Shown piece after piece: positions 11,394 through 63,590 of a stretch of DNA of 64,000 bases. Below the pieces are notes generated by a model. The model had not been told where the DNA came from. It was given only the letters and a program-made list of their open reading frames with translations, and did no database searches. This DNA is from Callorhinchus milii. Its lineage: Eukaryota. The stretch is from the NCBI RefSeq assembly GCF_018977255.1, contig NW_024704771.1, forward strand, positions 3,534,001 through 3,598,000, in the 5' to 3' direction. Both the position numbers and the translations under genes were made by a program. The first letter of the stretch is position 1; every line of letters starts with the position of its first letter.

Positions 11394-11835
11394 CCTGTGC
11401 TGCAGTTGTAGCTGTGCTGAAGCTGTGCTGTGGCCGTAGTTGTAGCTGTCCCACAGCTGTAGCTGTGCTGTAGCTGTAACTGTGTTGTGGCTGACGTTAT
11501 AGCTGTGCTGAAGCTGTGCTGTGGCTGTAGTTGTAGCTGTCCCACAGCTGTAGCTGTGCTGTAGCTGTAACTGTGTTGTGGCTGACGTTATAGCTGTGCT
11601 GTAGTTGTAGCTGTGGCTGTAGTTGTGCTGTGGCTGTAGTTGTGCTGTAGTTGTAGCTGTAGCTGTAGTTGTGCTGTGGCTGTAGTTGTGCTGTAGCAGT
11701 GGCTGTGGTGTAGTTGTGGCTGTGCTGTAGCTGTAGCTGTAGTTGTGCTGTTGCTGTAGCTGTGCTGTAGTTGTGCTGTAGCTGTGCTGTGGCTGTAGTT
11801 GTGCTGTGGCGGTGCTGTAGCTGTGCAGTGGCTGT
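11394..11835. repeat. Degenerate (GCTGT/AGTTGT/GCTGTG)n microsatellite at the start of gene A intron 1
   Basis: Directly visible. Confidence 0.95.
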
Positions 11836-11844
11836 GCCGCTTAC

Positions 11845-11887
11845 CCTGAGGCGCCAGGAGGAGCAGGAGAGCGGCTGTGAGCAACAT
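11845..11887 (-). CDS. Gene A leader exon MLLTAALLLLLAPQ
   Basis: ATG plus hydrophobic core, CAG G|GTAAG phase-1 donor, splices in frame to the V exon. Confidence 0.88.
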
Positions 11888-12425
11888 TCCCGCTGCCTGA
11901 CTCCAGGGCGAGGGACAAGTCACAAGATGGCGCCCAACGGCAACTCCGCCCTTTTAACGGCCACAGTTCAAAACGAAAGACAAACAAAGCGGCGACTGGC
12001 GCCGCTGTCCGGCTCTCTGGCCCCCGCCCCGCCCCGCCCCGCCCGGGGGCCGCTCGCTCGGTAACGCCGACTCCGCCCGTTCCGCCGCCTTCAGTTCGGC
12101 TCCGAAGCCGCTTCTCCTTCGCCTCTGACAACGGTGTCAGTTTGTCCGCCTCCCGTCCCCCCCGCGCTCACTCACTCACTGCGCAGGCGCCGCACCTCCC
12201 GTCCCCCCGCGCTCACTCACTGCGCAGGCGCCGCACCTCCCGTCCCCGCGCTCACTCACTCACTGCGCAGGCGCCGCACCTCCCGTCCCCGCGCTCACTC
12301 ACTCACTGCGCAGGCGCCGCACCTCCCGTCCCCGCTCCCACTCACTCACTCACTGCGCAGGCGCCGCACCGCCCGTCCCCGCGCTCACTCACTCACTCAC
12401 TCACTGCGCAGGCGCCGCGCCGCCT
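11888..12425 (-). promoter_or_regulatory. Gene A CpG-island promoter/5'UTR: YY1 motif, GC boxes, six NRF1-type sites in a roughly 40-nt tandem repeat
   Basis: CAAGATGGCG at 11923-11932; GGGGCGGGGC repeats; TGCGCAGGCGC x6; high CpG density. Confidence 0.75.
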
Positions 12426-12597
12426 CCTGTGGTGGTGGTGGTGGTTCAGGCGATGAGGCTCTGATGGGCACTGACCCACAGCGCATATTGAGGCTCTTCC
12501 GCTCTGAGAGCTGCCGCTGCTCCTGTCCTCGTTCACCGGCACAACCCACACCGTGACTGGGCGCGCGGTGGCGCCCGAGGATCTGAAAGCTGCACTC

Positions 12598-13135
12598 ACC
12601 ACCAGTGACCACAACAAAGCCACACGGGCGAAGCGCCTTTCACGGCGGGAGGACGTCCCAAGGCGCTGGACGGGCAGCGTTACAACCCGAGCTGCGGGTT
12701 GGGGTGGGGGAGGGCGGGTGCCCGGCGGGCGGGTGCCCGGCGGCGGAGGCAGGGAGATGGAAAGCACGGTTGAGGAGGAGGGTTCCAAGGCGGGTCTTGG
12801 AGCTGGTGAGGGAGGGGCGAGACGGAGGAACTGCGGGATGGACTTCCAGAGGGTGGGAGCAGAGTGGTGGAAGGTCTGCCCGCCGGGACTGGGGTGAGCG
12901 CGGCGGGGGGACAAGGACAAGGCGGGGGGAGCCCACTGAGCGGAGGTAGCAAACAGGGTGGTAGGGGGTGAGGAGGTTGCAGGGTCAGGGGGGAGCACGA
13001 CCGTGGAGGGCTTTGAAGGTGAGGGCCAGGATCTTGAACTGTATCTCCTGTGTGATGGGGTGATAGGGTGGTGGAGCCTCGGGCGGGATAGGACACGGGC
13101 TGCAGGTGACGTGCTGCCATTTGCACGGCCAGCCA
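12598..13135 (-). mobile_element. L2 3' fragment
   Basis: Tail ...GGGACGTCCTCCCGCCGTGAAAGGCGC; ARVLSR-like coding remnant. Confidence 0.75.
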
Positions 13136-17670: not shown

Positions 17671-18191
17671 TGTAAACGTAACACTTACTATTATTCACCT
17701 TGGACCGATAAAGCCTGTAGCAATTTTTTAATGTTTCCTTTTGTATTTTTGTGGTCTTACTTTCCAGTTCGACACTGTAATTAAAGTAAATACAGTAATA
17801 GTAATATACAATGTTCTAAATTTGACTTTTGTCAAAAAAATCACAGTATCATAGAATCTTACAGCACAGAATCCCATCGTGCCTGTGCCATCTATTTTTC
17901 CCATAGCCTTGGAATTTTTTTTCAAGTACATATCCAATTCCCTTTTCAAAGTTATTATGGAATCTGGTTCCACCACCCTGTCAGGCAGTACATTCCGGAT
18001 CATAACAACTTGCCTCGTGAAAAAATTTGTCCTGATCAAATCTCTGATTCTTTTACCAATTATTTTAAATCTGTGTCTTCTGGTTACCGATCCACCTACG
18101 AGGAGAAACAGCTTCTCCTTATTTACTCTGTCAAAACCCCTCATAATTTTGAACACCTATAAATATCCCCTGAAACTTCTCTGCTCTAAGG

Positions 18192-18256
18192 CTAACATTC
18201 CAGAAGATATTTGTATGAGTCCTCTTTAACAAGTTTATTTCTGTGCTTACAAAAAC
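18192..18256 (-). CDS. Candidate gene B terminal coding exon: sFCKHRNKLVKEDSYKYLLEC*
   Basis: TCTCCTAG acceptor, phase 1 open to TAG; not supported by paralog similarity. Confidence 0.45.
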
Positions 18257-19082
18257 CTAGGAGATACAGACTCAAAAGAATAGTGTTGGTCCATTAAAGA
18301 CTTTAGTAGTGGGGCGAACATTATCTGGCAAAATATATGAATACGTTTTATGAATTGATGGCTGTGATGTTTTGATATTGCTGATTATAATTCTATTGAT
18401 ACTTAGATGTTGAATGAACCTGGGAAGCAATAGTCAAAATTGTGATATCCCAGTGGAAATCTAAGGCCTTTTCCATTGGATAGAGTGGCACAGGAATACT
18501 CCCCAAAAAAATGCAAACAGACAAGATAACTTGTGCATTTTAATTTATCCACCCAAATTTCTCCCCAATTACACCACTGATCCCTTCATGCCCTGGCACA
18601 TCCCTACCTCTCCAGTCTGCTTACTCCCCAACCCACTATCCGTTGCCTCTACTAAGCCGGCTCTGGCCTCCTGCTTGTCCCTCGTGCCCTCCATTCCACC
18701 ATTGGTGGCCACACTTTCAGTCACTACGTCCTGAAACTCCAACATCTTGCGCTATCCGTCCACCTTGTCCCCTCCTTCCCCATCTTCATGTCGCACATGA
18801 AGACCCTCCTCTTTGAGCACATCTATGGTCACCTCTCCCCGGATCGGCCTTGTGATCCGCCACTGACAAGAGTTATGGGACACTACCCTGGATGATTTAA
18901 TGTCACATTTGCTATGTAATGCATTTAATTTCATCCTCATTGAATCAATGTAAGTATAGAAGGCATTGGACATAGTCAGAATACTTCAAATTCATTAAAG
19001 TCAATAATGCAAAACAATGTGCCTAATATATATTTTAGTTCTGCTAATGATCTGAAAGTATAATTGTATAACTGATACTTAC

Positions 19083-19190
19083 TGAGCTTGACAAAATAGA
19101 GAACCATTACTCCCATGATAGAGATATAGACTTCCATTATAATAATATTGGTTGTTGCTATCACCATACCTGGATCTCTGCATTTGGTAA
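19083..19190 (-). CDS. Gene B TM5 exon (108 nt): vTKCRDPGMVIATTNIIIMEVYISIMGVMVLYFVKL
   Basis: TGTCCACAG acceptor, A|GTAAGT donor. Confidence 0.85.
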
Positions 19191-19318
19191 CTGTGGACAT
19201 AAATTTTAATTACAATTCAAAGCTTAGTTCAAACATATTCCTTTTTTTTGGTCAGTCAGGTGTAGAATGTAGAAACATACTTAAGCAAACTGAGAATTCC
19301 ATGCATTCCACCTACACA

Positions 19319-19654
19319 TGGAGTCCTGTAGCTCAGTGGTTAGAGCACTCGCTTTGCAAGCAAGCGAGAGACCTGAGTTCAATTCCAGGCAGAGGGCGAA
19401 ACGTTGGGCAAGTTTCCTTATTCCACACGCCTAATAATAATCCCTCCAAAACCCAAAACAATAATAAATTGGTCATTTTCAATCTACGACTGTTTGTGGG
19501 ACATAGCTGTGCGCAATTGGCTGCCGCGTTCGCCCACAAATATACAGTCAATTCACTTTACAGTGTGTTCTGTGAAGCGCTTTGGGACGTCCTCCTGACG
19601 TGAAAAGCGCTATATCAAATGCAAGGATTATTATTATTATTATTATTATTATTA
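19319..19654 (+). mobile_element. Young tRNA-headed Deu-domain SINE inserted into an older unclassified repeat
   Basis: Near-identical to the 1595-1923 copy; 4-nt GCAA duplication in the head. Confidence 0.85.
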
Positions 19655-21509
19655 TAAATGCTCACTCATCCATGAGCATGCGCACTCTTTCCCTGAAGGG
19701 ATGTATCCTACTTACTGAATTCCAGAAAGGTTGGCAAAGGTCAAGGCTTGGAGAACCCAGAGGGTGCATTGAGGTAACTGCTGGAGTCTAACCAGCGAAA
19801 ACCGCGTAACTTAAATAATAATAATAATCCTTGCATTTCATATAGCGCTTTTCATATCTTCTAGACGTCTCAAAGTGCTTCCCAGAATAGACTGTAAAGT
19901 GAATTGACTGTATATTTGTGGGAGAAACACAGCAGCCAATTACACACAGCAGTGTCCCACAAACAGTCATGGATTGAAATGACCAATATATTATTGTTTT
20001 TCTTGAGGGATTATTATCAGGAGTATGGAGTAAGGAAACTTGCCCAAGGTTTCACCCTGCCGGGAATCGAACCCAGGTCTCTCGCTTACAAAGCGAGTGC
20101 TCAAAACTACTGAGCTACAGGACTCCACATCGATATTGCTGACTGGCAAGCTTTCCTGGTGCAGTCCATCAGGGACCATCCTACCCATTAGGGCTTTGGC
20201 TTGCAGGGTTAACAGGAGCTGAGTGGGAGGATTCCCTGCCCTAGCGCCGGGTCTATCCTTCCAAATACTGCCGATGATCCATGATGGCTGTGCGGAGGTG
20301 ACAAGGGATAAGCAGGAGGCCAGAGCCAGCTGAGCAGAGGCAATAGGAGTGGAGTGGGAAGAAAAGGTCAACAACAACTTATAACGTTTAGCTCCCTCCA
20401 TTCAGGGTAACACCTCAGAGCACTTAACAGTGGCAGAGCCTGACTCCTAGCCGCGGGGGAGAGGGGAGTTGGCCGTAGGCACAGTCGAAGAGGAAAGGTT
20501 TCAGGCAGGACTTGAAAGAGGGGAGAGAGGGAGCAAGGCAATGGGATTTAGGGAGAGTCTTTCAGAGTCTTTCATAGTGGCTGAAAGCATGACCTTGAAT
20601 GGTAGGGAGGAGGGTGCAAGGAATGCAAGGAACTGGCTGGTGCCAGTTCTGCAGAGGCGCCGGTTGATGGATTGGGAAGTGAGGAGGTCGGAGAAGTAGG
20701 GAGGTGCCAGAGAGTGAATGGATTTGAACACGAGAGTGAGGATCTTCAAGTCGATCCATTCAGTGGAGCCTGGCCAGAATTGGTGACATGTGGGTATGGA
20801 GCTTGGTCCGGGTCAGCTTATGGGCAGCAGAGTTACAAAGGTAGGGAGATGCCAAGGCATTGGATTTGTAGACAAGTGAGAGGATCTTGAAATCAATCCA
20901 TCCTCACCCTCAAAGCTCTCCATGGCCTCATTGCCCCTACTTCTGCGACCTTTTAAGCCCTGCCATCTTCACATCCACCGCGACGCCCGCCCTATCATTG
21001 GTGGGCGGGCCTTCTGCCACTCCGCCCTACCCTCTGCCACCACAGTCCCTCCACCTCACCCTCTCCCTTGCCTCCTTCAAAATCCCAAGACCCTGTCTTC
21101 GACCATGCCTTCGGTCACCCTCCTCCCCCACCCCAGCCCTCCACCCGCCCCGATCCCGATCCCAGCTTGGGTCCAAAACATTGATTGCCCAGTGCCTTGG
21201 CACGTCCTTCTGATGTGAAAGGCACTGTACAAATGTAATTTTGTTGTTATTTGTTGTTCTGTGAGCAATGAAGTAATGGAAATGTGGAAACATAGGAACA
21301 AGTGGAGGCTATTCAGCCCCTCGAGCCTGTTCTGCCATTCTATTAGATTATAGCTGATCTATACCTCAAGTCCAATTATCTGCCTTTGCCCTATATCTCT
21401 TAATACCCTGACGTAATAACTATCTAATCCACCTCAGTTTTGAAAATGTGAATGGATCCAGCCATAATCCACAGCATTTTGGGGAAGAAAGTTCCAGATT
21501 TCCAACAAG

Positions 21510-23260
21510 AAGAAGATTAATTTGTTTAGCGCCTTTCACATCGGGAGGATGTCCCAAGGCGCTGGACAGTGTACAGCCTTTCAGGCTCGTGCTGGGGTAA
21601 GGAGGGGAGGGGAATGGGGATAACTGATGGCATGGTCGAAGAAGAGCGTTTTGAGGCGGGACTTGAAGGAGGCTAAGGATGGGGCGAGGCGGAGTGACTG
21701 GGGGATGGAATTCCAGAGGTTGGGGGCAGAAGTTTGGCTGAAATCTCTCCTGCCAATGGTGAGGTGGGTGGGTCGGGGGCAATGAGCAGGCTGGAGCCGG
21801 CTGAGCGGAGGGAGCAGGTAAGTTGGTAGGGGGTTAGGAGGTTGCAGAGGTAGGGTGGGTCGAGGCCAAGGAGGGCTTTGTAGGTGAGGACCAGGATCTT
21901 GAACTGGATCCTTTGAAGGATAGGGAGCCAATGGAGTCGGCCGAGAATGGGGGAGATGGGGTCACGGAGTTTGGTGTGGGAGAGGACACGGGCTGCAGAG
22001 TTCTGGATTATCTGCAGACTGTGGAGGGAGGAGTTGGGAAGGCCAATAAGCACAACGTTTGCATAGTCGAGCCTGGAGGTGATGAAGGCATGAACAAGAG
22101 TTTCAGCGGCCTAAGGGATGAGGCAGTGGTGGAGTCGGGTGATTTATGGAGGTGTGGGAAGGCAGAGCGGGTCATGGCTTGGATGTTGGGAAGAAAAGAC
22201 AGTTGAGGATTGAACAAGATACCCAGGTTCCCGACTGTCTGGTGAGTTGTAGTGTGCAACCATGGAGGTTGATGCTGCCAGAGCCTGAGGTGCTGAGGCA
22301 CTGGCGTGAGCCGATCAGGAGGGCCTCAGTCTTGTTCATGTTCAGCTGCAGGAAATTTGCCCTCATCTAGGACTTGATGTCCCACCGCAGTCTGTCAGGA
22401 CAGCAGTGGTCCTGGAGTTGAGGGTGGAGGCAGAAAGATAGAGTTGGGTGTCATCCGCATACATATGGAAGTTGACGCATGTCAGCGGATGATGTCACCA
22501 AGGGGGAGCATGTAGATATTAAAGAGGAAAGGGCCAAGGACAGAGCCCTGGGGGACACCAGACGTGACAGTGTGGGTTAGAGGAGAAACCGTTAAGAGGC
22601 AAAAGTGGAGACAGTGAGGGAGATAGGAATCGAACCAGGCAAGGGCAGGTCAGAGAAGATTAAGTAAAGAGGAGAGGTGGTGAATGAGGATGGAGTGGTC
22701 GAAGTGGACAAGGAGGCAGAGGGAGCCCTGATCACAGATGTTCAAAATGTCATTAGTGACTTTGACCAGGCCTGTTTCTGTGCTGTGGGCAGCGTGGAAG
22801 CCGGATTGGAGGGGTTCAAAGAGGGAATGGCGAGAAAGAAAGGAGCTGAGCTGGGACGCGACAACTTGTTCCAGAAACTTGGAGAGGAATGGGAGGTTAG
22901 AGATGGGGGCGGCTGGAGAGGAGGGATGGGTCCTGGGAAGATTTTTTCAAATGGGGGTGATGGCGGCTGTTTTTGGGAGGGTGGGAACTGAATCGGTGGA
23001 CAAGGAGAGGCTGATGACGTCGGACAGGAGAGGGGCTAGAAAGTGGAGCTGAGAGATGAGGAGAGAGATTGGGATAGGATCGAGGGAGCAGGTGGTGGTT
23101 TTGAATTTGTGAACAATTGCGGTGAGGTAGGAGGAAGAGATAGGGTCGAAGGAGTATAGGGGGGGATGGATGGGGGCTGGGGCATGAGGGAGAGGTGGTG
23201 TGGGGGTGGCCGTTGACAGGGCAGAGGTGGCTGAGTGTATCCCCTCGATTTTGGATTCCA
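21510..23260 (-). mobile_element. L2 LINE fragment (RT region)
   Basis: RANFLQLNMNKTEALLIG, IQNSAARVLSHTK, FKTTTCSLDPIP. Confidence 0.88.
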
Positions 23261-23369
23261 CTATCCATTGCGTGAAAAACTGCCTCCTAATTTCACCCCA
23301 GCAGTTAATTATACTTTAGTTTTTTCCTATGACTCTATTCAGAGTTTTTCATTTGTATGAAATACTCAC

Positions 23370-51540: not shown

Positions 51541-51559
51541 ACCCCCTCCAAGAATGTCA

Positions 51560-51935
51560 GCCATGCTTAAGAGTCTCCAAACCAAGCTGAGAATTCCATG
51601 CATCCCACCTACGCACGGTAATCCCAGAGACAGATTGTTCAAATGGAATGCATACTCTCTGCCTAATAAATTATTAGGCGCAGGTTGGCAACAACCCAGG
51701 CTTGGGGACCCCAGAGTATGCTTTGGGGTAAATGCTGGAGTCTAACCAGCTAAAACAGCATAGCTTGCCTTTGATATTGCTGTCCGGCAAGCTTCCCCCT
51801 GCTTGTCCAGCTAACCCTACCCATTAGGGCTTTGCCTTGCAGGGTTAACAGGAGCTGAGTGGGAGGATTTCCTGCCCCCAGTGACTGGTCTGCCCTTCCA
51901 AACCGGCTGTGCTGTCATCAGCAACGACCTGGAGT
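51560..51935. repeat. Unclassified interspersed repeat of about 400 bp (copies at 39682-40090, 19283-19800 split by a SINE, 20130-20295)
   Basis: Shared AAGAGTCTCCA.ACCAAGCTGAGA, GGAGTCTAACCA, GATATTGCT...GGCAAGCTT and GGGTTAACAGGAGC blocks. Confidence 0.7.
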
Positions 51936-52383
51936 CAACATACAAAATTCAAGAGGCCTTTAAGATATGTCATATCGACATCAGAATGTGTCAGGAATTC
52001 ATTCCTGTTCCCACGGTATATAAATATGTATATGGTGAACCAAATCCATGACATATCAAAAACAGAAATCGCTGGGAATACTCAGCAGGTCAGGCAGCAA
52101 GGAAAGTGAGTCAACCTTTCGAGTCCATGACCCTTCGTCAGCACTGGAGGTTGCTTGACATGTCATGTCTGAAACTATACATTACATACCAAGAAAGTAT
52201 TTTCCAGCAGAAATCTATCTAATTTGTTCTTGATAACAAACAACACTTTATTTGTACTCAATTAGCAACTATCAGAAAAGATTCCTCTAGAACAGGAATT
52301 ACACATGGAGAGGTATCTTTAGCCTATGGGGAGACAAAAAACAGTTAACAAAATCAACACTAACAATTACTATTTTAACTTAC

Positions 52384-52512
52384 TCTTGTGTAACAAAAAG
52401 GACCTTGTTAGTTCAGTTTCAGGACGCAGGAAGAAGAAGCCAGTATAGATCATTATTCCAACAGCCGTGAGACAGCCAAAACCAGAGATAATTCTGTATT
52501 CAAACGAAAATC
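52384..52512 (-). CDS. Gene D TM3 exon (129 nt): gFSFEYRIISGFGCLTAVGIMIYTGFFFLRPETELTRSFLLHK
   Basis: CTTTTCTAG acceptor, A|GTAAGT donor. Confidence 0.9.
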
Positions 52513-53456
52513 CTAGAAAAGGGACATATTGAAGAATGCGGTGAATGGAGAATGTGAAACAACAACAAATCACATTTACAGAGCGCCCTTCATGTTGGGA
52601 GTACGTCCCAAGGGGCTGAACAGTCAGAGTTTGCACCCAAGCTGGGGGTTGGTATCAGGACAGCAAGGAGGGTAGGGATAGGAGGGTGACGGAACGCATT
52701 GTGGAAAAGGAAGTTCTTGAGACAGACCTTGAAGGAGTTAAGGGAGTAGGTGAGGTGAAGGATCTATGGGATGGAATTCCAAAGGAAAACACTGCATCCA
52801 TCTGAATAAATTTAAATTTCCATTTGGTGGAGAAAATGCATTTTTAGGCATTTCACATTCAAATGAAAAATTACTAAATTTTTCGGATAAACATTCTGTT
52901 TCATTCCTTGCTCGAGGAAATATGAATATCCTAGTTCTCTTTTTTGGATAACTGAGTGTCCGAGATCAATAAAAATAGGAGTCCTATAGCGTAGTGGTTA
53001 GAGCAATCGCCTCGCAAGCGAGAGGACCTGGGCGGGGTGAAACCTTAGGCAAGTTTCCTTCCTCCACACGCCTGTTTACCTAGCAGTAAGTAGGTACCAA
53101 GTGGCTACTTCATTGTAGATCCCTTTCCAGGATCCGCCAATCAAGGGTCCATCCCATAGAAAAACAAAATAAATAATAAGAATTTGGTCACTGAATCCAC
53201 AACTGTTTCTGAGACACTACTGTGTGCAATTGGATGCCGCGTTTTGCCCACAGAATACACTATCACTGCAATTTTCAATATATTCTGTGAAGTGTTTGAG
53301 ACATCTCAACGATATAAGGCGCTACATCAAATGCAAGGATTATTATTTTACTTTAAAAGAAGTAGAATTTGATATCAGCAGGAGCTACAGTTTGGCATCT
53401 GATAAAGCAGTATGAAAATGTGATGACAAAACAAAAGCAAAAAAAAAGAAACTTAC

Positions 53457-53558
53457 CCTCATCTAATACGCACAAAAAACTTGAAAGTAATAGACAAACC
53501 AAGGATAACATTTGAAAGAACACGCAAACAGCAGTGAGCTGGACATGACGTCTGTGAA
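53457..53558 (-). CDS. Gene D TM2 exon (102 nt): vHRRHVQLTAVCVFFQMLSLVCLLLSSFLCVLDE
   Basis: ATTCCTAG acceptor, G|GTAAGT donor. Confidence 0.9.
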
Positions 53559-54390
53559 CTAGGAATAGAAACAAATCAAAGTGAAATTATTTTTAAGGAA
53601 AATAAGCAAATGATCATACTCCAAGTTTTAAGTTCTGTTACATTGCCCCCCTCCGACCGTGACTTACCCCAAACTTAGTAGAAATCCTCGTATGTGCATT
53701 CATCACCTCCCACCTCAACTGCTTCAATACTATATTCACCAGTCTCCCCAGCTCCACTATACACAAATTCCAGTTAATCCAGAACTCCACCGTCTGCATA
53801 CTCAGCCGCACTGAACTCCGTACCCCATCACACCATTCCTCGCCAGTCTCCACTAGTTCCCTATCACACACACTAAACTTTGCACCCCCATCACACCAGT
53901 CCATGCCAGGCTCCACTACTTCCCCATCATTGAACGGATTGATTTCAAGATCCTCATACACGTCTTCAAATCCCTTCATGCACTTCCCTGCCTCTTCAAT
54001 CATTCCCCAATCAATTACCCATTGCCTCCGCACGACTGGCTCTGGCCTCCTGCTCGTCTCTTGTGCCCTCCATTTCACCATCGGTCATTGTGCTTTCAGC
54101 CACTATGCCCTGAAATTCTGGAACATTCTCCCTCAATCCGTCACTTTCCCCCCTTCTTCCCCATCTTCAGGTCTCACATGAAGACCTTCCTCTCTGACTG
54201 TGCCTTCAGTCACCTTCCCTCCTTCAGGCTCGGCATCATGCTCTGCCACTGTCAAGCTCTCTGAGACGCTAACCTGGCGCTATATAAATGCAAGCTGTTG
54301 TGGTTCTTTTGAAACAAAAATGAAATTCAAACTTGAAATAGCTTAGGCTATAATTTTGTAATGGAAGCCTTCCCAGGAAATACACGTTAC

Positions 54391-54507
54391 CTTTATATTC
54401 CTCCAGGGCATAAAAGATTATGAACACGGCTGCAGCAAAAGAGGTTACATTGCTGATTAGTGCAATGATGGACGCCATAAGAGAATGCTGATGAGCAAAC
54501 AGAATTC
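54391..54507 (-). CDS. Gene D TM1 exon (117 nt): gILFAHQHSLMASIIALISNVTSFAAAVFIIFYALEEYK
   Basis: TTGTTTTAG acceptor, G|GTAACG donor. Confidence 0.9.
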
Positions 54508-55314
54508 CTAAAACAAGAAACAGATGTAAATTTATCTTAGTTTTAAAAACATATTGGAAAATGACAATGATTTAGCGGTACTAGAATAGTAATGAGAGCA
54601 TTTTACCGCAGGAAAATTAGGCCATTAGGCCATTCAGCCCCTCGAGCCTGTTCAAACTTTCTATTAGATCGTGGCTGATCTGTAACTCAACTCTAATTAC
54701 CTGCCTTTGCCCCAGATCCCCTGACCTAATAAAAATCTATCCACTTCAGTCTTGACAATTTGAATGGATCCAGCATCCATAGCCTTTTGAGGAAGAGAGC
54801 TTCAGATTTGCACTACGCTTTGCTTGAAAAAAATACTTCCTGATTTCATTTTTAAATGGCCTAGCTCTAATTTTAAGTTAATACCCCCTTGTTCTGGATT
54901 CCCCCACCAGAGGAAATAGTTTCTCTACCTTATGCAATCCATTTGTTATTTCAAACACCTCAATCAGATCACCCCTTAACCTTCTAAACTCAAGGGAATA
55001 CAGAACAAGTTTAAGCAACCTGTAATAATTTAACCCAGTATCATTTTAGTGAAATTTCTTTTAACCTATGTCAAACCTTTTGGTGCTGAGGACTGGCTGC
55101 CCCATTTGGGAAATGTCCGCGAGCCTCATAAGCAATATTTTTGTGTTTCCCTTCCCGAAACATAAGATTTACAGGTTGTGGAGGGAGCGGAGGTAGGCCA
55201 GATGAAATGGTGTGGGAGGGGGTCTGGATGAAATCAGCCTGGGCCGGATGTGGCCCGCGGGCCGCCAATTGGACCACCCTGACCTACATGAATTCAAGAA
55301 CAGACCAAACCTAC

Positions 55315-55581
55315 CATTGATGGTGAGGAAATGTGAGCGGCTGTTTTTGCTGACCACATTTTTGACAATGCACGTGTACCAACCACAGTGTCTAAGATTG
55401 ACTTTTCTGATGATCAGCGTGCTGTTGTCATCCTCCAGTTTCCAATTTTCACTGAATTCAATTCCTTCTTCCCTCACCCAAAGAAATTCATTGGGGGTTT
55501 CATCATTTATAACACAGCTCAGCACAACAGAATCCACCACATAGCTGGGATCCTGAAGGATCATTGGTGCTGACAATATGT
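55315..55581 (-). CDS. Gene D Ig C2 exon (267 nt)
   Basis: CTCTAACAG acceptor, G|GTAGGT donor; C...W...HCGWYTCIVKNVVS. Confidence 0.92.
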
Positions 55582-56461
55582 CTGTTAGAGAGAAAGAAGA
55601 TATATTGGTCGGTGATCCAATTTAAGGGTGTTCTTATGGTAAAGTCAACAACAAGAACAACTTGCATGTATATAGTGCTTCTCACACAGAGTAGTGTCCC
55701 AGAGAGCTTGACAGTGGCAGAGTAAGATGCCGAGTAGAGGGAGGTGATCGTAGCATGGAACCTTCCTCTTTGAGCACCTCAAGATGGGGAAGGAGGGGGC
55801 GAAGGAGGGATTGAGGGAGAGTGTTCCGGAATTTTGGGGTGTGGTACACGATATTTACGGCTTTCATTTACCCACCCAAGACATTATGTTTTTGTATAAA
55901 CTTCATCTGCATTCCCTGCAGTTTAGAACGTTGAGGGGTGATCTGATTCAGGTGGTTACAATGATAAAGGGATTTGATGAGGTAGAAACAGAGAAACTCA
56001 CCCAGTGAGGGTTATTGCTGACAATGGTTTTCAACCATCACAAACTTTATCCCTAAAAATAACAAATTATATTTTCACAGGGCCATTCATGTTGGGAAGT
56101 TGTCCCAAGGCGCTGGACAGTCGGGGATTTGGACCCAAGCAGGGGGTTGGGATCAGGAGCGGTGGAGGGCAAGGAAGATAGGGGTGGGAGGGTGCCCGAA
56201 GGCTCGGTCAAAAAGGAAGGTCTTAAGATGTGTCTTGAAGGAGGCAAGGGAGAGAGCAAGGTGAAGGGACTGTGGGATAGAGTTCCAAAGGGTGTGGGCA
56301 GAGAGGCTGAAGGCCCAATCACCGATGGCAGGGCAAGTCGGCTGGGGGATTTGGAGCAGCTGGAGCCTGCTGAACAGAGGGAGCGGACAGGTCGATATGG
56401 TGTTAGCAGGCCATGTTCTCTTTGTCTCACGAGGTACAACTCGTAGACCAATCACACTTAC

Positions 56462-56818
56462 GTTGGACAATCAACTGTGTGAAGAGTCCAGGGCTATTCA
56501 GCTCATCCAGGTTCACCAAGCTCGGCGATGACACACTCTGATTTGTTGTGGAAATATAAAAGCCACTGTCATGTGTTTCTAAAGCGTCCAGAAAAAGAGA
56601 CCCATCTTCTGTGTTTAATCTCGCTCGATGCTTATAATAGATATTGACACTGGGCAAGGCAGCCCCGAAACCAAACTCTGCAATTTGTATCTCATTGTCA
56701 CGGGTTAAATACAACCAGCGGATAATATCTCCTCTTGTCATCTTTCCGGCATACCCGTGGAATAAAACAGAGGATCGTGTGACACGATAAATGGTTTCTT
56801 TGAAGTTATGTGTTTTAT
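56462..56818 (-). CDS. Gene D Ig V2 exon (357 nt)
   Basis: TTTTTGCAG acceptor, C|GTAAGT donor; GSLFLDALETHDSGFY. Confidence 0.9.
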
Positions 56819-58762
56819 CTGCAAAAAAAATCCGCCAGTTGAGTTAAACACTTTGGAAAAGAGCCACGCATTCACACATACGTTATGCAAGTAACAATAA
56901 TCCTTGTGTTCAATACAGCCCCTTATCACGTCATCGAGACGTCTCAAAGTGCTTCACAGAATATTCTGTAAAGTGTAGTGACTATGTGTTTTGTAGGCAA
57001 AAGGCAGTAGCGAATTGTGCACAGCAGCATCCCAGACAATCGTGGGTTTCCCTTCTCCACTTCTCACAATGCAGACTTATAATTGGATAATAATATTATA
57101 TTAATAATATAATAATAATCCTTGCATTTGATACAGCGCCTACTTACCATCGCTAGATTCTTCCTCATTCTTTGAAAGAAGTTCAACCTCCACATAAAAG
57201 TAGGATCTGCCAACATCCCACAGGCAAAATGAATGAGGAAGTATCCCTTTAAGAACATTTGTGCTCAGTGACCTTTCCCTAATCTGCTCGATCTGAGGTA
57301 CGCCTTCAATTCTTTACTCAGAGGAAGCAGCAGTGTGACCAGTGAAAGTGCTGAAAATATACAGTAACAATACATTTAGCACAGATTTATTTACTTTAAA
57401 CACAGCAAAGTACAGATTATAGCCATGCTATAATATAAATATATAAATATCATATAATATAAATCTAATATTTATATTACATGCTATGGGCGAGGACGTT
57501 TTGTATGAGGAGGTTGAACTTCTTTCAAAGAAAGAGCAAGACAACTATATGTAAAATAAACAAATAGAAGTATGTATAATATACTGTATATATCAAATAA
57601 AATAAACAAATCAAATAATTTATTATTTAAATAAAATTAAAGTATGTATAAAACAAAACAAATAAAAGTATCTATAAAATAAAATAAACAAATAAACGTA
57701 TGTATAAAATAAACATAAAAGTATGTAAAATATACAGTAATAATACATTTAGCACAGATATATTTACAGTAAACCAGTAACACAGCAAAATACAGCTTAT
57801 AGTCATCTTATAATCTAAATATATAAATGTAAATATTTATAGTATAAATATTATAAAATACTACGAAGAGCAACATAATCGGGGCCTCTTATCCCCTCCA
57901 GTCTGCGCAACGGCTGCGCTTTCAGCCACTATGCCCCGAAACTTTGGAACTCTCTCCCTCAATCCCTCGCCTTGCCCCCCCCCCCTTCACCATTTTCAGA
58001 TCACTTCCTTGTCCCCTCTGAGGCATCTCCTTTCAAGAATAAAGAGTGGAGGAGCTGAGCGATGTTGTGGAGGTGGGGGAAGGCAGAACGGTCATGGATG
58101 TGGAATTTGAACTCAAGTGGCAGAGCAACCAAAAAAACAGACACAGGCCACAAATAGTAAATGTGGCAAATTGGGAAAAGGGAGAGGTAAGGTGACAACA
58201 AAGAGTCACAGAATCAATGCAATCATTGCAAATAGGTTTGAAGTGATGAATGGAATTTATGAACTCTGTCGAGGTATATTGACTGTCTTTCTGTTGTGGG
58301 CAAAACGTGGCAGCCAATTGCACACAGCAGTGTCCCATGAATAGTAGTGGATTGAGTGACCAATTTTTATTTTTTTTGAAGGAATTATTACCCCCAGAAA
58401 GTAATCTGCTAATCGATTAACAACTGGGTTCCTTCTTACTGCTAAATAAAGAGGCACGTGGAGTAAGGAAACTTGTCCATTGTTTCGCCCTGCCAGGAAT
58501 CGAACCCAGGTCTCTCTCTCACTTGCGAGGCAAGTGCTCTAACTACTGAGCCATAGGATTGAGACACAGAAGTACAACAATTTGCATTTATATGGCGCCC
58601 TTTAATAGGAGAATGTCTCCGAGTGCTCATTCTATTCATGCTACACAGAAAATCTTTGTGCTACAACTCCCAATATCAGCTGCAAATGAAACATATAACT
58701 ATCGACTAACCCATATCACAATGCACATATGACCTGTTACGTCCTTCACCGGTAGCACTTAC

Positions 58763-59092
58763 AATGAATGTTTAATTGTATGGATTGAGTTCTTTGACCT
58801 TGGTTTAGAGTTGCTTGATAAATGCCACCATCGTTTATTGCCAAGTTCTGCAATAGGAGAGAGCCGTTATCTCGATGAATTTCTATTCGTTTTTTGTAAT
58901 TATCATTGATGTGAAAATCTGACGATCCGACTTCATATTCCAAAATTCGTGTTTTATTTCCATAGATTACGTAATCCCACTGGATCACATCTTCACGTTG
59001 AAACTCATTGACTGGAAATCCGGGCAATAAAACAGAGGAATGTTCAAAGCCAGTCATCTGTTTCACAGTGTTACTAAACACCTTGAAATGAC
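58763..59092 (-). CDS. Gene D Ig V1 exon (330 nt)
   Basis: TTCTTTCAG acceptor, T|GTAAGT donor; IQWDY...NGSLLLQNLAINDGGIY. Confidence 0.92.
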
Positions 59093-59499
59093 CTGAAAGA
59101 AAACCATTGATTGAGTTTAACATAATAATAAGGAACAGCCTTCCAAGTTTTATAAAATGTCAAATTGACAGCTATTCCTGCTTAAATTTCTGAAACTGTA
59201 TATCTCTCTTTTTCTTCCCCAGGTCTCTCCCAAAGTACCAGTCCTTTTCTGTTCCGTCTTCCACGCACAGTGCCAACTGAACCCTAGAAATTTACAACAC
59301 AGAAGAAAGTGATTCAGCCTATTGCATTTTGTGGACTCTTTCAAAGAGCAATCCTTTAAATTGCCTTTACCTGTCTTTTCTCGATATCTCTACAAATGTC
59401 TTCTTTTTCACTACATTGAATTTCATCTGCCATTGGTCTGCCCAATGCTTAAGTGTCTTCATGTCCTGTTCAGCTGTGTGTAATTGACTGTCGCGTTTC

Positions 59500-61840
59500 A
59501 ACAAAAACAACACACAGAGTAGCATCTGAGAGCGCTTAACAGTGGCGGAGCCTAACTCTGAGCCCGGGGGAGGGGGCCATAAGCACAGTTAAACAGGAAA
59601 GCTTTCAGGTGGGACTTGAAAGAGGGGAGTGCGGGCAAGACAGATTGATTGAGGGAGAGTGTTCCAGAGTTTTGAGGCGTAGTGGCCAATGGTGGGGCGA
59701 GGGACGAGCAGGAGGCTGATGTCAGTCTCGCGGAGACGCTGGGTGGTGGATTGGGGAGCAAAGAGGTAGGGAGGTGCCAGAGATTGAATGGATTTGAGAA
59801 TGAGGATCTTGAAGTTGATCTGTTCGGTGAAGGGGAGTCAGTGGAACCTGGTGAGATGTGGGTAGGGAGTTTGATCCGGGTAAGTATGCGGGCAGCGGAG
59901 TTTTGAATAAACTGGATCTTGTAAATGGTGGTGCAAAGGAGACTGGCGAGAAGTGCAGGAGGTAACAAACGCATGAGGGATTTGGCTGCATTTGGGGTAA
60001 GGTACGGTCGGAAGTAGGCAATATGGCAGAGATTGAAGAAGGCAGTCCTGGTCAGCAACCGGATCTGGGAGAGAAAGCACAGTTGGGGTGATTGCATACT
60101 GGTTCAGTGAGTCTGAGGGAGAGCCCAGGGAGGTTGAGGAGTTTAGATCTGCAGGATTAAAGACGTTGACGGGAGCCAAGGAGTATAGCTTCTGTCTTGT
60201 GTGTATTCAGCTGCAGGTTTAAACTCATCCAGGCCTTCATGTCTGCCAGGCTATCTGATATAATCTGGAGGAGGCAAAGTAGATTTGTGTGTCATCCACA
60301 TACATGTGGAAGTTTACCCTGTGTCTGCGATGACATTGCTCAGAGGCAGCATATGGATAAAGAAAAGAAGAGGGCCAAGGATGGAGCCCCAAGGGGGACC
60401 GGGCAGGGGCGGGAGGAGAACCATTTGCTGAGATGGAATGATTTGGTTGGTTAAGTAGGACTCGAACTGTACAGTTATGGTCCCACTAAGGTAAATGAGG
60501 GAGGTGAGCCAATGGAGGAGGATGGCGTGGTTGACTGTGTTGAACGCGGCAGAGAGATCCAGGAGGACGAGGAGGTAGAGGCAGCCATGTTCACAGATAG
60601 AAAGAATGTCGAATGTGACTTATAAGCGCTATCTGTGCTGTGGGCAGGGTGAAAACCAGACTGCAGGGGCTCAAGTAGAGAGTGGAGGGAGAGGTGTGAC
60701 TGAAGTTAACCTGCAACAATGCACACCATGCCTTTGGTGAGGAAGGGTAGGTTGGAGATGGGATGGTAGTGTGCAAGATTACAGGGATCGAGGATGGTTT
60801 TTTGAAGAGGGATGTGATGACAGTGGATTTCAGGGGGATTGGAACAGAACCTGAGGAGAGAGACTGCTTGACTGTGTCAGCCAGCAGTGGAGAGAGAAGT
60901 GGGAGTTGAGTGACCAGCAGCTGGGTGGGAAGGGAGTCAAGGTAGTAAGTGGTGAACTTCATTCGGGTGATTGTGGTTGAGAGGGAGGGAGAAATAGGGA
61001 GTGAAGGGAGGGGGTAGTGGTAGGTGCCGTGGCAGAGGAAGAAGGTTGTGTGGATGGTCTGGGTGGGGTGGAAGGGGACAAGGTGAGGAAGGACAATGCA
61101 GCCAAGTGGATGTTTTCAATTTTTGAGGCAAAGAAGTCTAGGATCTCTTCGCATTTTGACGTTTGATGTGAGGATAGAGGGGACTTAAGGGGGTGCACAG
61201 AGGAGGTGATGGACGGTGGAAAACTGCATCTTTGGATTGTTGTTTGCCTCCAAGATGACTCTGGAGTAAAAGTCAGTTTAGGGCTATGAAAGGAAGCAGC
61301 GGTAGGTGCAGAGGTGTTTGAGCCACAGCAGACAGTGAATCATGAGGCCAGATTTCTCTCATCTGCACTCTAGCGTCCGGGTTGGGAGTTTGAGTGAGCG
61401 GAGATGATTGTTGTACTAGGGGCAGTGGGTAGGTTTGGAAACAACCCTGGATTTCTGGGGAGCCAGGAAATTGAAGGTTGTGGAGAGAGACGGATGTTCA
61501 GCAGCTTAACAGCTGCATCAGTATCATTGCGGGTGGAGGGTCATCAGGTCCGAGGAGGAGAGGGCATATGTGAGGATGTCAGAGGGAAGCTTTTTCTAGG
61601 GGTGGAAAAAAATGGTGGAGGATTTGGGAAGGAGGATTTGGGAGAGGGAAATGAGGAAGTGGTCTGAGATGGCCTTGTCCATGTGTTATGACGAGGTTGA
61701 GGGAATGGCCACGGTTGTGGGCCGGCCAGTTGATGTGGAGGGTGAGGTTTAGGGAGGAGAGGAGGGCAGTGAAATCTAAGGAGGTTGTGCAAGGGGAGTT
61801 TAGGTGGAGATTGAAATCGCCCATTTTGAGCAGCTGCCAG
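59500..61840 (-). mobile_element. Longest L2 fragment, endonuclease to 3' tail, degenerate
   Basis: GDFNLH...GHSLNLV (APE endonuclease), FTTYYLDSLP, IQNSAARILTR. Confidence 0.88.
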
Positions 61841-62316
61841 GTGTAATTAACTATTATTTGTCCACGATATACTCTGTAAAGCTCTTTGAGACACGGCATT
61901 AACATGTTTAGGCAGTAAATCAAATGCAAGGATTATTATCATCATTGAAAGAACACTCCTTTACCCTTATTTTCCCCATACCTCTGCAAATTTCTCCTTT
62001 CGTAGATATCCATCGTATTCCATCTGGAAAGCTAATGTGGATGCTATTATTGATATGGTTGATCTGGATATTACATAATGGTATACATTCACTATGAAAA
62101 AACAAAATCCTCCTAATTTTGCCCTCAACTAACTATCTTAAATTAATATCCTCCCATCGCTTACCAACCAGTGGATATAATTTCTCCCCTATCGATTTCT
62201 CAAAATTGAAGATTCCCTTCAACAATAACTTGTATTTTTGACTTCATGCAGTGCAGGGCTTGATACCAGCACAATACCAGCCAGGGAGAAGTGACCATAA
62301 ATACAGGCACAACCTG

Positions 62317-62621
62317 AATAATAATAATAATAATCCTTGCATTTGATATAGCGCTTTTCACGTCGGGAGGACGTCCCAAAGTGCTTCACAGAACACACTG
62401 TAAAGTGAATTGACTGTATATTTGTGGGCAGACGCGGCAGCCAATTGCGCACAGCAATGTCCCACAAAGAGTCGTAGATTGAAAATGACCAATTTATTGT
62501 TGTTTTTGGTTTTGGAGGGATTATTATTAGGCTCTGTGTCAGGTTTCGCCCTGACCTGGAAATGAACTCGGGTCTCTCGCTTGCAAAGCGAGTGCTCTAA
62601 CCACTGAGCTACAAGACTCCA
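62317..62621 (-). mobile_element. Young SINE with a short internal deletion
   Basis: Same diagnostic body as the other young copies; lacks the GTGGAGTAAGGAAACTTGCCC segment. Confidence 0.83.
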
Positions 62622-63152
62622 CGGGGAAGGAGGGGGCAAAGGAAGAGGGACGGGAGGGAAAGTTTTCTGGAGTTTCGGGGCATATTGGTTGAAAGAACGA
62701 CCACTGATGGTGGAGCGGTGAGCACAAGGGGCAAAGCAGGGGGCCGGATCCAGCCGAGCAGTAGCAGCGGGTATTATGTTGGGCAGTATGTAGCATCATA
62801 TTAATTTGTCTCTGGAGCCGAACGGCCCTTTTCCACACCAACTCATCTTGCGAAATCAAAATGAAAAATTACGATAGCGCTCTTGAAAGCGCTTCACGGA
62901 ATATACTAGAGAGCGCACACTGTGTGCTGTGAGTTGACTGTGTATTTTGCGGGCGAAACGCAGAAGCCAATGGCGCACAACAATTGACAATAAATACCAT
63001 TTATTACTTTGTTATTTTTTTTGTTGTTGTGGCTGTTGGGCCCCGTCACCCACACACACCCCTTACCTTTGGACGCTAAGAGTGTGAAGTGCAGACCGAG
63101 CTGAGCTGTGGCTGTGCTATTGATGTGGCTGTGCAGTGGCTGTGCCGCTTAC

Positions 63153-63195
63153 CCTGAGGCGCCAGGAGGAGCAGGAGAGCGGCTGTGAGCAACAT
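63153..63195 (-). CDS. Gene D leader exon MLLTAALLLLLAPQ
   Basis: Identical to the A, B and C leader exons. Confidence 0.88.
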
Positions 63196-63590
63196 TCCCG
63201 CTGCCTGACTCCAGGGCGAGGGACAAGTCACAAGATGGCGCCCAACGGCAACTCCGCCCTTTTAACGGCCACAGTTCAAAACGAAAGACAAACAAAGCGG
63301 CGACTGGCGCCGCTGTCCGGCTCTCTGGCCCCCGCCCCGCCCCGCCCCGCCCGGGGGCCGCTCGCTCGGTAACGCCGACTCCGCCCGTTCCGCCGCCTTC
63401 AGTTCGGCTCCGAAGCCGCTTCTCCTTCGCCTCTGACAACGGTGTCAGTTTGTCCGCCTCCCGTCCCCCCCCGCGCTCACTCACTCACTGCGCAGGCGCC
63501 GCACCGCCCGTCCCTCCCGCGCTCACTCACTGCGCAGGCGCCGCACCGCCCGTCCCCCGCGCTCACTCACTGCGCAGGCGCCGCACGTGG
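63196..63590 (-). promoter_or_regulatory. Gene D CpG promoter cassette with three NRF1-type sites
   Basis: Same core as A; TGCGCAGGCGC x3. Confidence 0.75.

What the first reader, a model, noticed from the sequence alone, without database searches (positions are those of the whole stretch)
11831..63590. Near-identical promoter and leader cassette on four strongly diverged genes (localised concerted evolution)
Seen: about 320 bp from the intron-1 donor through the 5'UTR, YY1 site and GC boxes reads the same in A (11831-12150), B (33058-33380) and D (63138-63460). C (47333-47650) differs by one missing GCCCC unit. By contrast, the best-conserved core of the A and B V domains matches at only 24 of 57 residues by hand count, and non-repeat introns do not align. 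Inference: recent, repeated gene conversion or cassette copying homogenises the regulatory and signal-peptide module while the ligand-binding exons diversify. This would enforce co-expression of a diverse receptor set.
Basis: partly seen in the sequence, partly recalled or inferred. Interest (0 to 1): 0.75.

Follow-up and report, generated by a model that had tools for sequence, protein, structure and literature searches.

The report
Identical promoter-leader block on four paralogs
Four neighbouring elephant-shark genes for very different cell-surface Ig receptors all start with the same 340-base CpG-island promoter and signal-peptide exon, letter for letter; copying between the genes (gene conversion) best explains this, and it is a clean example of a known process, not a new one.

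Summary
Four same-strand copies share a block that is 100% identical over 342-350 ungapped bases (A/B/D). Copy C differs only by one missing GCCCC unit. The block holds the splice donor, a 43-nt signal-peptide exon (MLLTAALLLLLAPQ/G, phase 1), the 5'UTR and about 270 bp of promoter. It is the gene-proximal part of a CpG island (GC 67%, CpG o/e 1.0). It lies between an intronic (CTGTAG)n minisatellite and an upstream 40-bp tandem array.

The genes are V(-V)-C2 plus five-transmembrane receptors of Callorhinchus milii. Their exons are 21-67% identical in protein, with dS 0.5 to above 2. Their introns align only at transposons. Annotated proteins for A, B and C start with this leader.

B and C share a further 212-226 bases beyond the minisatellite (0.9% diverged) that includes a piece of B's own old SINE. 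This shows real DNA transfer.

Interlocus gene conversion with at least three events is the best reading (0.8). The cross-species test could not be run. "Enforced co-expression" is untested. Identical promoters also fit stochastic promoter choice.

The scan found this same block before in an overlapping window (s1-139585). It found look-alike promoter-leader blocks on other DNA of this genome (s1-139394).

The parts
11836..12160 (-). Cassette copy A (unique block: donor, leader exon, 5'UTR, proximal promoter)
   Evidence: nhmmer envelope. Perfect 350-bp run with B at 11812-12161. GC 67%, 36 CpG, o/e 1.01.
33063..33386 (-). Cassette copy B
47338..47656 (-). Cassette copy C (lacks one GCCCC unit in the GC-box run 47521-47546)
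63144..63467 (-). Cassette copy D
11845..11887 (-). Leader coding exon of gene A (ATG..CAG G, MLLTAALLLLLAPQ + 1 nt, phase 1), with donor GTAAGC at 11839-11844. The same exon lies at B 33072-33114, C 47347-47389 and D 63153-63195.
   Evidence: The annotated C. milii proteins P0209 (gene A), P0211 (gene B) and P0210/P0215 (gene C) all start MLLTAALLLLLAPQ and continue into the window's V exons.
11924..11932 (-). CGCCATCTT (YY1/initiator-type core) 37-45 nt upstream of the ATG, with TTAAAAG at 11951-11957 and the (GGGGC)n GC-box run at 12019-12049. The same offsets hold in B, C and D.
   Evidence: The 9-mer occurs only in the four cassettes. Motif match only; no binding or TSS data.
11395..11835 (.). 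Intron-1 minisatellite of A, 11-bp period (CTGTAG/CTGTGG)n, starting 9 nt after the donor. B 32852-33064, C 46911-47339, D remnant 63105-63144.
   Evidence: TRF. The arrays are 5-9% diverged between copies with many indels. CpG o/e 0.1-0.3.
12160..12397 (.). Upstream 40-43-bp tandem array of A (CACTGCGCAGGCGCCGCACC[T/G]CCCGTCCCCGCGCTCACT). B 33399-33587, C 47658-47836, D 63480-63586.
   Evidence: TRF. The unit tables show copy-specific T/G variants and unit numbers.
11801..12950 (.). CpG island at A. Islands at B 33051-33700, C 47301-48000 and D 63151-63900. These are the four largest CpG-island-like intervals of the window.
   Evidence: criteria GC>=0.55, o/e>=0.65. The whole window has o/e 0.49.
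32626..32851 (.). Extra intron tract shared only by B and C (C: 46699-46910), on the far side of the minisatellite. It has 2 substitutions and 2 indels. Its first ~100 bp are the end of B's old SINE (32415-32725).
   Evidence: The C fragment matches B's SINE far better than any other SINE copy (<=73%). Left of 46699, C carries an unrelated LINE tail.
628..11887 (-). Gene A: leader, V 6876-7226, C2 5981-6232, TM exons about 5223-5363, 4549-4710, 3628-3762, 2090-2194, 628-762
   Evidence: P0209 = UniProt A0A4W3IIQ8
17731..33114 (-). Gene B (LOC103189487): leader, V 29552-29902, C2 28694-28945, TM exons 27329-27469, 26499-26660, 24580-24714, and later exons to 17731 in isoform X2
   Evidence: P0211 = XP_007908097.1
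38034..47389 (-). Gene C (LOC103189488): leader, V0 45807-46103, V 44505-44858, C2 43276-43548, TM1-5 41642-41785, 41392-41502, 40723-40902, 39134-39226, 38034-38141
   Evidence: P0210 exons 100% identical to the window. Five hydrophobic segments after C2.
49684..63195 (-). Gene D: leader, V0-type 58763-59092, V 56462-56818, C2 55315-55581, TM exons 54362-54520, 53440-53565, 52376-52528, 50288-50401, 49684-49818
   Evidence: No annotated protein was retrieved for D.

Best explanation
The block is kept identical by interlocus (ectopic) gene conversion among four tandem, same-strand paralogs spaced 14-21 kb apart. A break in one copy's CpG-island promoter is repaired from another copy. The copied patch is about 0.35-1 kb. 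It covers the splice donor, the signal-peptide exon, the 5'UTR and the proximal promoter. Shown: the identity, its sharp limits, the deep divergence of everything else, and transfer of B-derived intron DNA into C. Inferred: (1) the process sustains itself, because only this island keeps enough identity to pair, so patches cannot spread into the diverged intron, the V exon or the far upstream DNA; (2) the two flanking tandem arrays, shared by all copies, are where patches resolve or where identity is quickly erased by slippage; (3) the CpG island may be a meiotic break hotspot, since C. milii has only a partial PRDM9 that was not seen expressed in testis; (4) the signal peptide appears to be encoded essentially within the cassette and is presumably cleaved off, so homogenising it would cost the mature ligand-binding protein nothing, while conversion into the V exons would be blocked by lack of homology or removed by selection. 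The regulatory outcome (co-expression or promoter competition) is unknown.
For: There are zero substitutions in about 324 unique bp across four copies, with perfect runs of 342-350 bp. That bounds pairwise divergence below about 0.9%. Every exon pair has dS 0.5 to above 2 and 21-67% amino-acid identity. The youngest SINE copies in the window differ by 3.4-5.5%. The identity covers synonymous leader sites, the 5'UTR, 9 nt of intron and 36 CpGs. The loci otherwise match only at transposons and weakly at exons. Block identity ignores the coding relationships: A+B have one V exon and C+D have two. B and C share another 212-226 bp beyond the minisatellite at 0.9% divergence. This includes a fragment of the SINE that is complete only in B, while C's far side is an unrelated LINE tail. 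That is direct evidence of a patch of at least 1 kb copied between otherwise unalignable introns. Upstream DNA beyond the 40-bp arrays differs in every copy, so a single unequal crossover cannot explain the pattern. The block is the proximal part of the four largest CpG islands in the window. Baker et al. 2017 report a partial (KRAB-SET), slowly evolving C. milii PRDM9 with no detected testis expression (PMC5519329). Annotated proteins for A, B and C use this leader. One of them, a GI-numbered XP_007908097.1 record, predates the 2021 assembly that holds the window (the dating is my own knowledge).
Against: No other holocephalan sequence could be fetched. Species-specific homogenisation, the classic signature of conversion, is therefore untested. 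All DNA comes from one assembly (GCA_018977255.1, unplaced scaffold MU249860.1). Short-read polishing could have turned about 99% identity into 100%. The hotspot and self-sustaining-island steps rest on inference and on one paper about PRDM9, not on recombination data. With zero differences, neither the direction nor the number of events involving A and D can be reconstructed. Strong constraint on a promoter and signal peptide surely acts as well and cannot be separated from conversion here.
Confidence: 0.8

Rival explanations
1. Purifying selection alone: the block is an ultraconserved promoter and signal-peptide element inherited from the ancestor of all four genes and frozen by constraint, with no copying.
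For: The block holds functional parts: start codon, signal peptide, donor, GC boxes and an initiator-like motif. Ultraconserved non-coding elements of this length exist between orthologues (my own knowledge).
Against: Perfect identity covers synonymous sites, 9 nt of intron and a slippage-prone (GCCCC)n run that C shows is tolerant of change. B and C also share non-functional intron DNA, including a SINE fragment, at 0.9% divergence, which constraint cannot explain. Shark relatives of the same V-V-C2-5TM family have unrelated leaders, and a bamboo-shark locus shows no similarity to the block. That last point is weak evidence, given about 400 My of divergence and 10 kb of gaps.
Confidence: 0.05
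2. A mobile or captured cassette: a transposon-borne promoter plus first exon recently inserted upstream of each gene.
For: The unit is discrete and repeat-flanked, and it appears abruptly in otherwise unrelated DNA.
Against: There are no terminal inverted repeats, the two flanks are different repeat families, and no target-site duplication is evident. The window holds only four copies. Each sits in the same orientation at the 5' end of a gene, 1.2-4.6 kb upstream of the next coding exon, and in A, B and C it is spliced to it. No displaced older leader or promoter was found.
Confidence: 0.05
3. Assembly or polishing artefact: the copies are really more different, and consensus polishing or collapse made them look identical.
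For: All DNA is from one assembly, on an unplaced scaffold. The block is shorter than a short-read insert and is flanked by tandem repeats. Multi-mapped reads could erase small differences.
Against: Each copy sits in unique, different flanks and keeps copy-specific features: the 5-bp gap in C, differing poly-C lengths, and array unit number and T/G variants. Polishing cannot create identity from sequences as diverged as the rest of these genes. Protein models that appear to predate this assembly carry the same leader on genes A and B (the dating of these records is my own knowledge).
Confidence: 0.05
4. Single unequal crossovers in the intron-1 minisatellite created hybrid genes (one gene's 5' end joined to another's body), with no patch-like conversion.
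For: All copies carry a related minisatellite just 9 nt inside intron 1. That is a plausible crossover substrate in a same-strand tandem array.
Against: A single crossover would also carry over everything upstream of the block. Beyond the 40-bp arrays the four upstream regions are unrelated (B has a 32-bp array, D a 20-bp array, and A and C have unique DNA). Exchange on both sides is needed, which is conversion or a double crossover.
Confidence: 0.05

Closest known systems
Gene conversion between paired IgSF receptors: dog CEACAM1/CEACAM28, human SIGLEC11/SIGLEC16
   Same: Both are tandem Ig-superfamily receptor genes in which a patch of a few hundred bases to about 2 kb, including upstream sequence and the leader exon, is nearly identical while the rest differs. 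The dog case is a 2.2-kb fragment with about 1 kb upstream, the leader, intron 1 and the N exon (PMC2832619). The SIGLEC case is PMC5701461 (abstract seen).
   Different: In those cases the ligand-binding V/N exon is the heart of the tract, which keeps ligand specificity shared. Here the tract stops before the V exon and only the promoter and signal peptide are shared. Four genes of two architectures take part, not a pair.
Human gamma-globin (HBG1/HBG2) conversion bounded by a simple repeat (Slightom, Blechl and Smithies 1980; my own knowledge, not checked here)
   Same: It is the classic localised conversion that covers the promoter and 5' part of tandem paralogs, with a boundary at a simple-sequence repeat in an intron.
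   Different: The globin paralogs are young and similar throughout. Here the bodies are saturated at synonymous sites and tandem arrays flank the tract on both sides.
Clustered protocadherin variable-exon promoters
   Same: They form a tandem array of diversified cell-surface receptor units. Each has its own CpG-island promoter with a shared conserved element, and choice among them is stochastic and methylation-dependent (PMC10463633; PMC8787164).
   Different: Protocadherin units are single variable exons spliced to shared constant exons. Here every gene has its own full exon set. Protocadherins share only a short conserved element, not 340 identical bases. No expression data exist here.
KIR gene promoters (my own knowledge, not checked here)
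   Same: Promoters are highly similar across a diversified NK-receptor cluster, with a small CpG island at the start site whose methylation gives variegated expression.
   Different: KIR genes are similar along their whole length because they duplicated recently and recombine. Here only the 5' module is similar.
Conserved 'secretory cassettes' of conotoxins and frog-skin peptides (my own knowledge, not checked here)
   Same: A near-invariant signal-peptide exon sits in front of hypervariable mature domains.
   Different: Those cases are described at the level of the coding signal or propeptide across species. Here the identity is at DNA level, is mostly non-coding, and is within one genome.

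Membership tests
Interlocus (ectopic) gene-conversion tract | Abrupt island of near-identity between paralogs whose flanks are much more diverged | tested here: met
   342-350 bp at 100% identity, against unalignable introns and exon dS of 0.5 to above 2
Interlocus (ectopic) gene-conversion tract | Relationships in the tract disagree with relationships in the rest of the genes | tested here: met
   Coding exons and architecture group A+B and C+D. The block is identical in all four, and the longer tract groups B+C.
Interlocus (ectopic) gene-conversion tract | Transfer of neutral, copy-specific DNA from donor to acceptor | tested here: met
   A fragment of the SINE that is complete only in B lies in C next to the shared intron tract, and C's far flank is an unrelated LINE tail
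Interlocus (ectopic) gene-conversion tract | Exchange on both sides (a patch), not a single crossover | tested here: met
   Upstream DNA beyond the 40-bp arrays and intron DNA beyond the minisatellite are copy-specific
Interlocus (ectopic) gene-conversion tract | Paralogs within a species more alike than orthologues between species (concerted evolution) | not testable with these tools
   No holocephalan DNA could be reached. The only shark locus fetched (L002) shows no similarity but is too distant and full of gaps. Two other shark loci returned no DNA.
CpG-island promoter | At least 200 bp with GC >= 55% and CpG observed/expected >= 0.65 at a gene's 5' end | tested here: met
   Islands of 650-1150 bp start at the leader exon. 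The block has GC 67% and o/e 1.01, while the window has o/e 0.49.
CpG-island promoter | Transcription start site and unmethylated state | not testable with these tools
   No CAGE, RNA-seq or methylation data. The TTAAAAG and CGCCATCTT motifs are consensus matches only.
IgSF signal-peptide (leader) exon | ATG, hydrophobic core, phase-1 donor, spliced to a phase-1 Ig exon | tested here: met
   ATG..CAG G|GTAAGC. V and C2 exons are phase 1-1. Annotated proteins join the leader to the V exons of A, B and C.
Protocadherin-type variable-to-constant array | Variable first exons, each with a promoter, spliced to shared constant exons | tested here: not met
   Each gene has its own C2 exon and five TM exons
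Transposable element carrying the cassette | Terminal repeats, target-site duplication, dispersed copies | tested here: not met
   No inverted termini. There are four copies only, all at gene 5' ends. A genome-wide copy count was not possible.

The most novel reading that the evidence does not exclude
Promoter-plus-leader homogenisation may be a genome-wide habit of the elephant shark and not a quirk of this cluster. C. milii PRDM9 is only partial and was not detected in testis. Meiotic breaks would then fall by default on CpG-island promoters. In tandem families those breaks would be repaired from paralogous promoters. This would create self-sustaining 'homology islands' that keep whole receptor arrays under one identical promoter, whose members might then compete for shared enhancers (stochastic choice). 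The scan's notes of similar blocks in a Siglec pair and other IgSF clusters of this genome fit this idea but are unchecked here.
Probability: 0.25. Interest if true: 0.6.

Novelty: new member of a known kind. Interest (0 to 1): 0.4.

Why it matters
The case shows unusually cleanly that conversion can be confined to the regulatory and secretion module of a gene. Four receptors with different ligand-binding domains, and even different domain numbers, end up under one literally identical CpG-island promoter. That sets up a natural experiment. Any difference in expression among the four genes must come from outside the 340 bp. If they are expressed in a mutually exclusive way, promoter sequence cannot be the discriminator. 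The match between the tract, a CpG island and flanking minisatellites, in a species with a doubtful PRDM9, gives a testable link between where recombination starts and where paralogs are homogenised. There is also a practical point. The identical first exons and repeat flanks make gene models, read mapping and expression counts in this cluster error-prone.

Tried and rejected
Only one useful hit came out, P0131 from a horn shark.

2. I searched the protein index with a spurious ORF that spans the cassette, hoping to find the DNA in other assemblies. There were no hits.

3. A profile led by the horn-shark protein returned 58 elasmobranch HEPACAM/CEACAM/CD48-like proteins but no C. milii ones. 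Re-ordering the alignment so that window exons came first did return the C. milii proteins of genes A, B and C.

4. Fetching DNA for cross-species comparison mostly failed. P0131, P0209 and P0211 are not on record. P0212 (Heterodontus) and P0213 (Chiloscyllium plagiosum) returned no DNA. P0210 returned the window's own DNA. P0214 gave a bamboo-shark locus with no similarity to the block.

5. A search for older, displaced leader or promoter relics found none.

6. A search for terminal inverted repeats around the unit found none apart from array-internal matches.

7. I considered that the B-C extra tract might be older than the core block. With 2 differences in 212 bp against 0-1 in 329 bp, the two are not distinguishable, so I do not claim different ages.

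Full report

**What the block contains.** The genes run on the minus strand. Read in gene direction, the block ends with ATGTTGCTC...CCTCAG G|GTAAGC. This is a 43-nt leader coding exon (MLLTAALLLLLAPQ plus one base, phase 1) followed by a consensus donor. In copy A the exon is 11845-11887 and the donor 11839-11844, with the same offsets in B, C and D. Upstream of the ATG lie a CGCCATCTT core (positions -45 to -37), a TTAAAAG (-70 to -64) and a (GGGGC)n GC-box run, which is where C lacks one unit. The 9-mer occurs nowhere else in the window. These are consensus matches, not evidence of binding. The unique block is 324 bp, GC 67%, with 36 CpGs and CpG observed/expected 1.01. With the adjoining upstream array it forms the four largest CpG-island-like intervals of the window: A 11801-12950, B 33051-33700, C 47301-48000 and D 63151-63900. 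The whole window has o/e 0.49.

**Flanks.**
- Only 9 nt after the donor, intron 1 enters an 11-bp-period (CTGTAG/CTGTGG)n minisatellite: A 11395-11835, B 32852-33064, C 46911-47339, and a 40-bp remnant in D.
- Directly upstream of the block lies a 40-43-bp tandem array: A 12160-12397, B 33399-33587, C 47658-47836, D 63480-63586.
- Its unit number (3 to 7) and a T/G variant differ between copies.
- Between copies the arrays are 4-9% diverged with many indels.
- Beyond the arrays the copies are unrelated. B continues into a 32-bp array, D into a 20-bp array, and A and C into unique DNA.
- No terminal inverted repeats bound the unit.

**The genes.**
- Stop-to-stop ORFs, splice phases and Pfam give, for each cassette, a V-set-like exon and an Ig_3/I-set (C2) exon, both phase 1-1.
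- tblastx between the gene bodies adds five conserved hydrophobic exons per gene.
- A profile search retrieved the C. milii proteins themselves. P0209 (UniProt A0A4W3IIQ8) is gene A. P0211 (XP_007908097.1, LOC103189487) is gene B. P0210 and P0215 (LOC103189488 isoforms) are gene C.
- All start MLLTAALLLLLAPQ and continue into the window's V exons. The cassette's exon is therefore the first coding exon in independent annotations.
- P0210 shows five hydrophobic segments after the C2 domain.
- Genes C and D carry two V-like exons and A and B carry one.
- The Ig part is 30-40% identical to elasmobranch proteins annotated HEPACAM-, CEACAM- or CD48-like.
- P0212 and P0213 are shark V-V-C2-5TM counterparts.
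- The fetched locus L001 is 100% identical to window 27377-57389. This places the window on GCA_018977255.1 scaffold MU249860.1.

**Contrast with the rest of the genes.**
- V exons are 21-33% identical in protein (A-B 38/116).
- C2 exons are 37-51% identical and TM exons 28-67%.
- Nei-Gojobori dS is 0.5 to above 2 in every exon pair. The leader has no difference at all.
- Sensitive blastn between the four loci finds only SINE/LINE copies and faint exon matches outside the block and its arrays.
- The youngest SINE copies in the window differ by 3.4-5.5%.
- Zero differences bound the pairwise divergence of the block below about 0.9%, and the depth of a four-copy star tree below about 0.23%.

**Direct evidence of copying.** B and C share a further tract on the far side of the minisatellite, 32626-32851 = 46699-46910, with 2 substitutions and 2 indels. 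Its first ~100 bp are the end of a SINE that is complete only in B (32415-32725). That SINE is about 20% diverged from the other SINE copies. The C fragment matches B's copy and no other (87% including two gaps, against at most 73%). To the left of 46699, C carries an unrelated LINE tail. So a patch of at least 1 kb of B-type DNA (SINE end, unique intron, minisatellite, block and upstream array) sits in C, inside an intron that otherwise does not align. This cannot be constraint. It shows that patches can cross the minisatellite. The higher divergence of the arrays therefore reflects their own slippage, not necessarily the ends of tracts. With 2 differences in 212 bp against 0-1 in 329 bp, I cannot say the B-C tract is older than the core.

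**Mechanism.** The best reading is interlocus gene conversion among same-strand tandem paralogs, with at least three events needed to make four copies alike. A single unequal crossover in the intron minisatellite would also have carried over the upstream flank, which is copy-specific. Exchange on both sides is therefore required.

I infer, but have not shown, three further points:
- **Self-sustaining island.** Only this island keeps enough identity to pair, so patches cannot extend into the diverged neighbours.
- **No cost to the mature protein.** The signal peptide appears to be encoded essentially within the cassette and is presumably cleaved off. Homogenising it would then leave the mature receptor unchanged.
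- **Possible break hotspot.** Baker et al. 2017 report that C. milii has only a KRAB-SET PRDM9 without SSXRD, with no rapid zinc-finger evolution. It was the sole species in their survey with a putative orthologue but no detected testis expression. Species without a complete PRDM9 direct recombination to promoter-like features (PMC5519329; PMC10463633).

**Rivals.**
- **Pure purifying selection.** This cannot explain the shared SINE fragment or identity at synonymous and intronic sites. Shark relatives have unrelated leaders, and a bamboo-shark locus shows no trace of the block. That last test is weak.
- **A mobile cassette.** There are no termini and no stray copies.
- **An assembly artefact.** This cannot create identity from such diverged genes, and each copy keeps its own marks. 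Polishing could still have rounded about 99% up to 100%. Only long reads can settle that.
- The GI-numbered RefSeq protein for gene B and the UniProt/Ensembl model for gene A carry the same leader. From my own knowledge they predate the 2021 assembly.

**What could not be done.** The one exhaustive protein search was swamped. Three look-ups found no record. Two shark loci returned no DNA. No holocephalan other than C. milii was reachable. No expression or methylation data exist here. 'Enforced co-expression' therefore remains a guess. The protocadherin precedent shows that similar CpG-island promoters can instead serve stochastic choice (PMC10463633, PMC8787164).

**Comparison with known cases and verdict.**
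- Localised conversion that includes the upstream region and leader exon is documented in related IgSF families. One case is dog CEACAM1/CEACAM28, a 2.2-kb fragment (PMC2832619). Another is SIGLEC11/16 (PMC5701461, abstract seen). In those cases the ligand-binding exon lies inside the tract. Here it lies outside.
- The gamma-globin tract bounded by a simple repeat is the classic structural analogue (my own knowledge).
- In mammals, fast-evolving tandem receptor arrays mostly lack CpG-island promoters, with protocadherins as the exception (PMC10463633). An Ig-receptor array with identical islands is therefore somewhat unusual.
- The scan has already reported this same block in an overlapping window with the same conclusion (s1-139585). 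It has also reported look-alike blocks elsewhere in this genome (s1-139394, s1-139634, s1-139597). I did not check those.
It is a new member of a known kind, of moderate interest.

Noticed in passing
window 45807-46103 (-) and 58763-59092 (-): Genes C and D carry an extra N-terminal V-like exon, giving V-V-C2-5TM, while A and B have one V exon. RefSeq isoform X3 of gene C (P0215) skips the C2 exon.
   Followed up: partly
window 46699 (C) and 32626 (B): The left end of the B-C shared tract falls inside B's SINE. In C it abuts the 3' tail of an unrelated LINE that ends in AAGCACTTTGAGACA, a motif that also occurs inside the SINE. C also has an 11-bp deletion next to the second copy of that motif. 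This may mark resolution or template switching at a short shared motif.
   Followed up: partly
window 33594-34141 and 35827-35997; 63618-64000: Further tandem arrays lie upstream of the cassettes: a 32-bp unit (18 copies, recurring 1.7 kb further on) at B, and a 20-bp unit (19+ copies, cut by the window end) at D. Four repeat families are packed around each promoter.
   Followed up: no
window 34588-34879: A G-rich low-complexity stretch with a run of about 109 G (34751-34859) lies upstream of gene B.
   Followed up: no
window 1600-1923, 19319-19648, 45087-45395, 50519-50842, 62317-62621: A young tRNA-derived SINE family of about 325 bp. Copies are 94-97% identical to each other, and Rfam tRNA hits lie at their heads. 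Older copies (about 80% identical) lie at 10771-11083, 19814-20128 and 32415-32725.
   Followed up: partly
window 8362-10107, 21503-23097, 59568-61089: LINE fragments with reverse-transcriptase-like ORFs lie in intron 1 of genes A and D and in the 3' part of gene B, about 60-70% identical to each other. They account for the only long non-cassette match between the loci.
   Followed up: no
Heterodontus francisci gene of P0212 (no DNA returned): The horn-shark counterpart has a gene model spanning 254 kb for a 425-residue protein. This could be a mis-joined model or a distant first exon shared across a cluster.
   Followed up: no
window 11895-12030 (+): The YY1-like motif contains an ATG in good context on the opposite strand (AAGATGGCG). 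It opens an 80-97-codon ORF across the cassette. A protein search with an ORF spanning the cassette on the gene strand found nothing, and this plus-strand ORF was not searched. It is probably a chance ORF in GC-rich DNA.
   Followed up: partly
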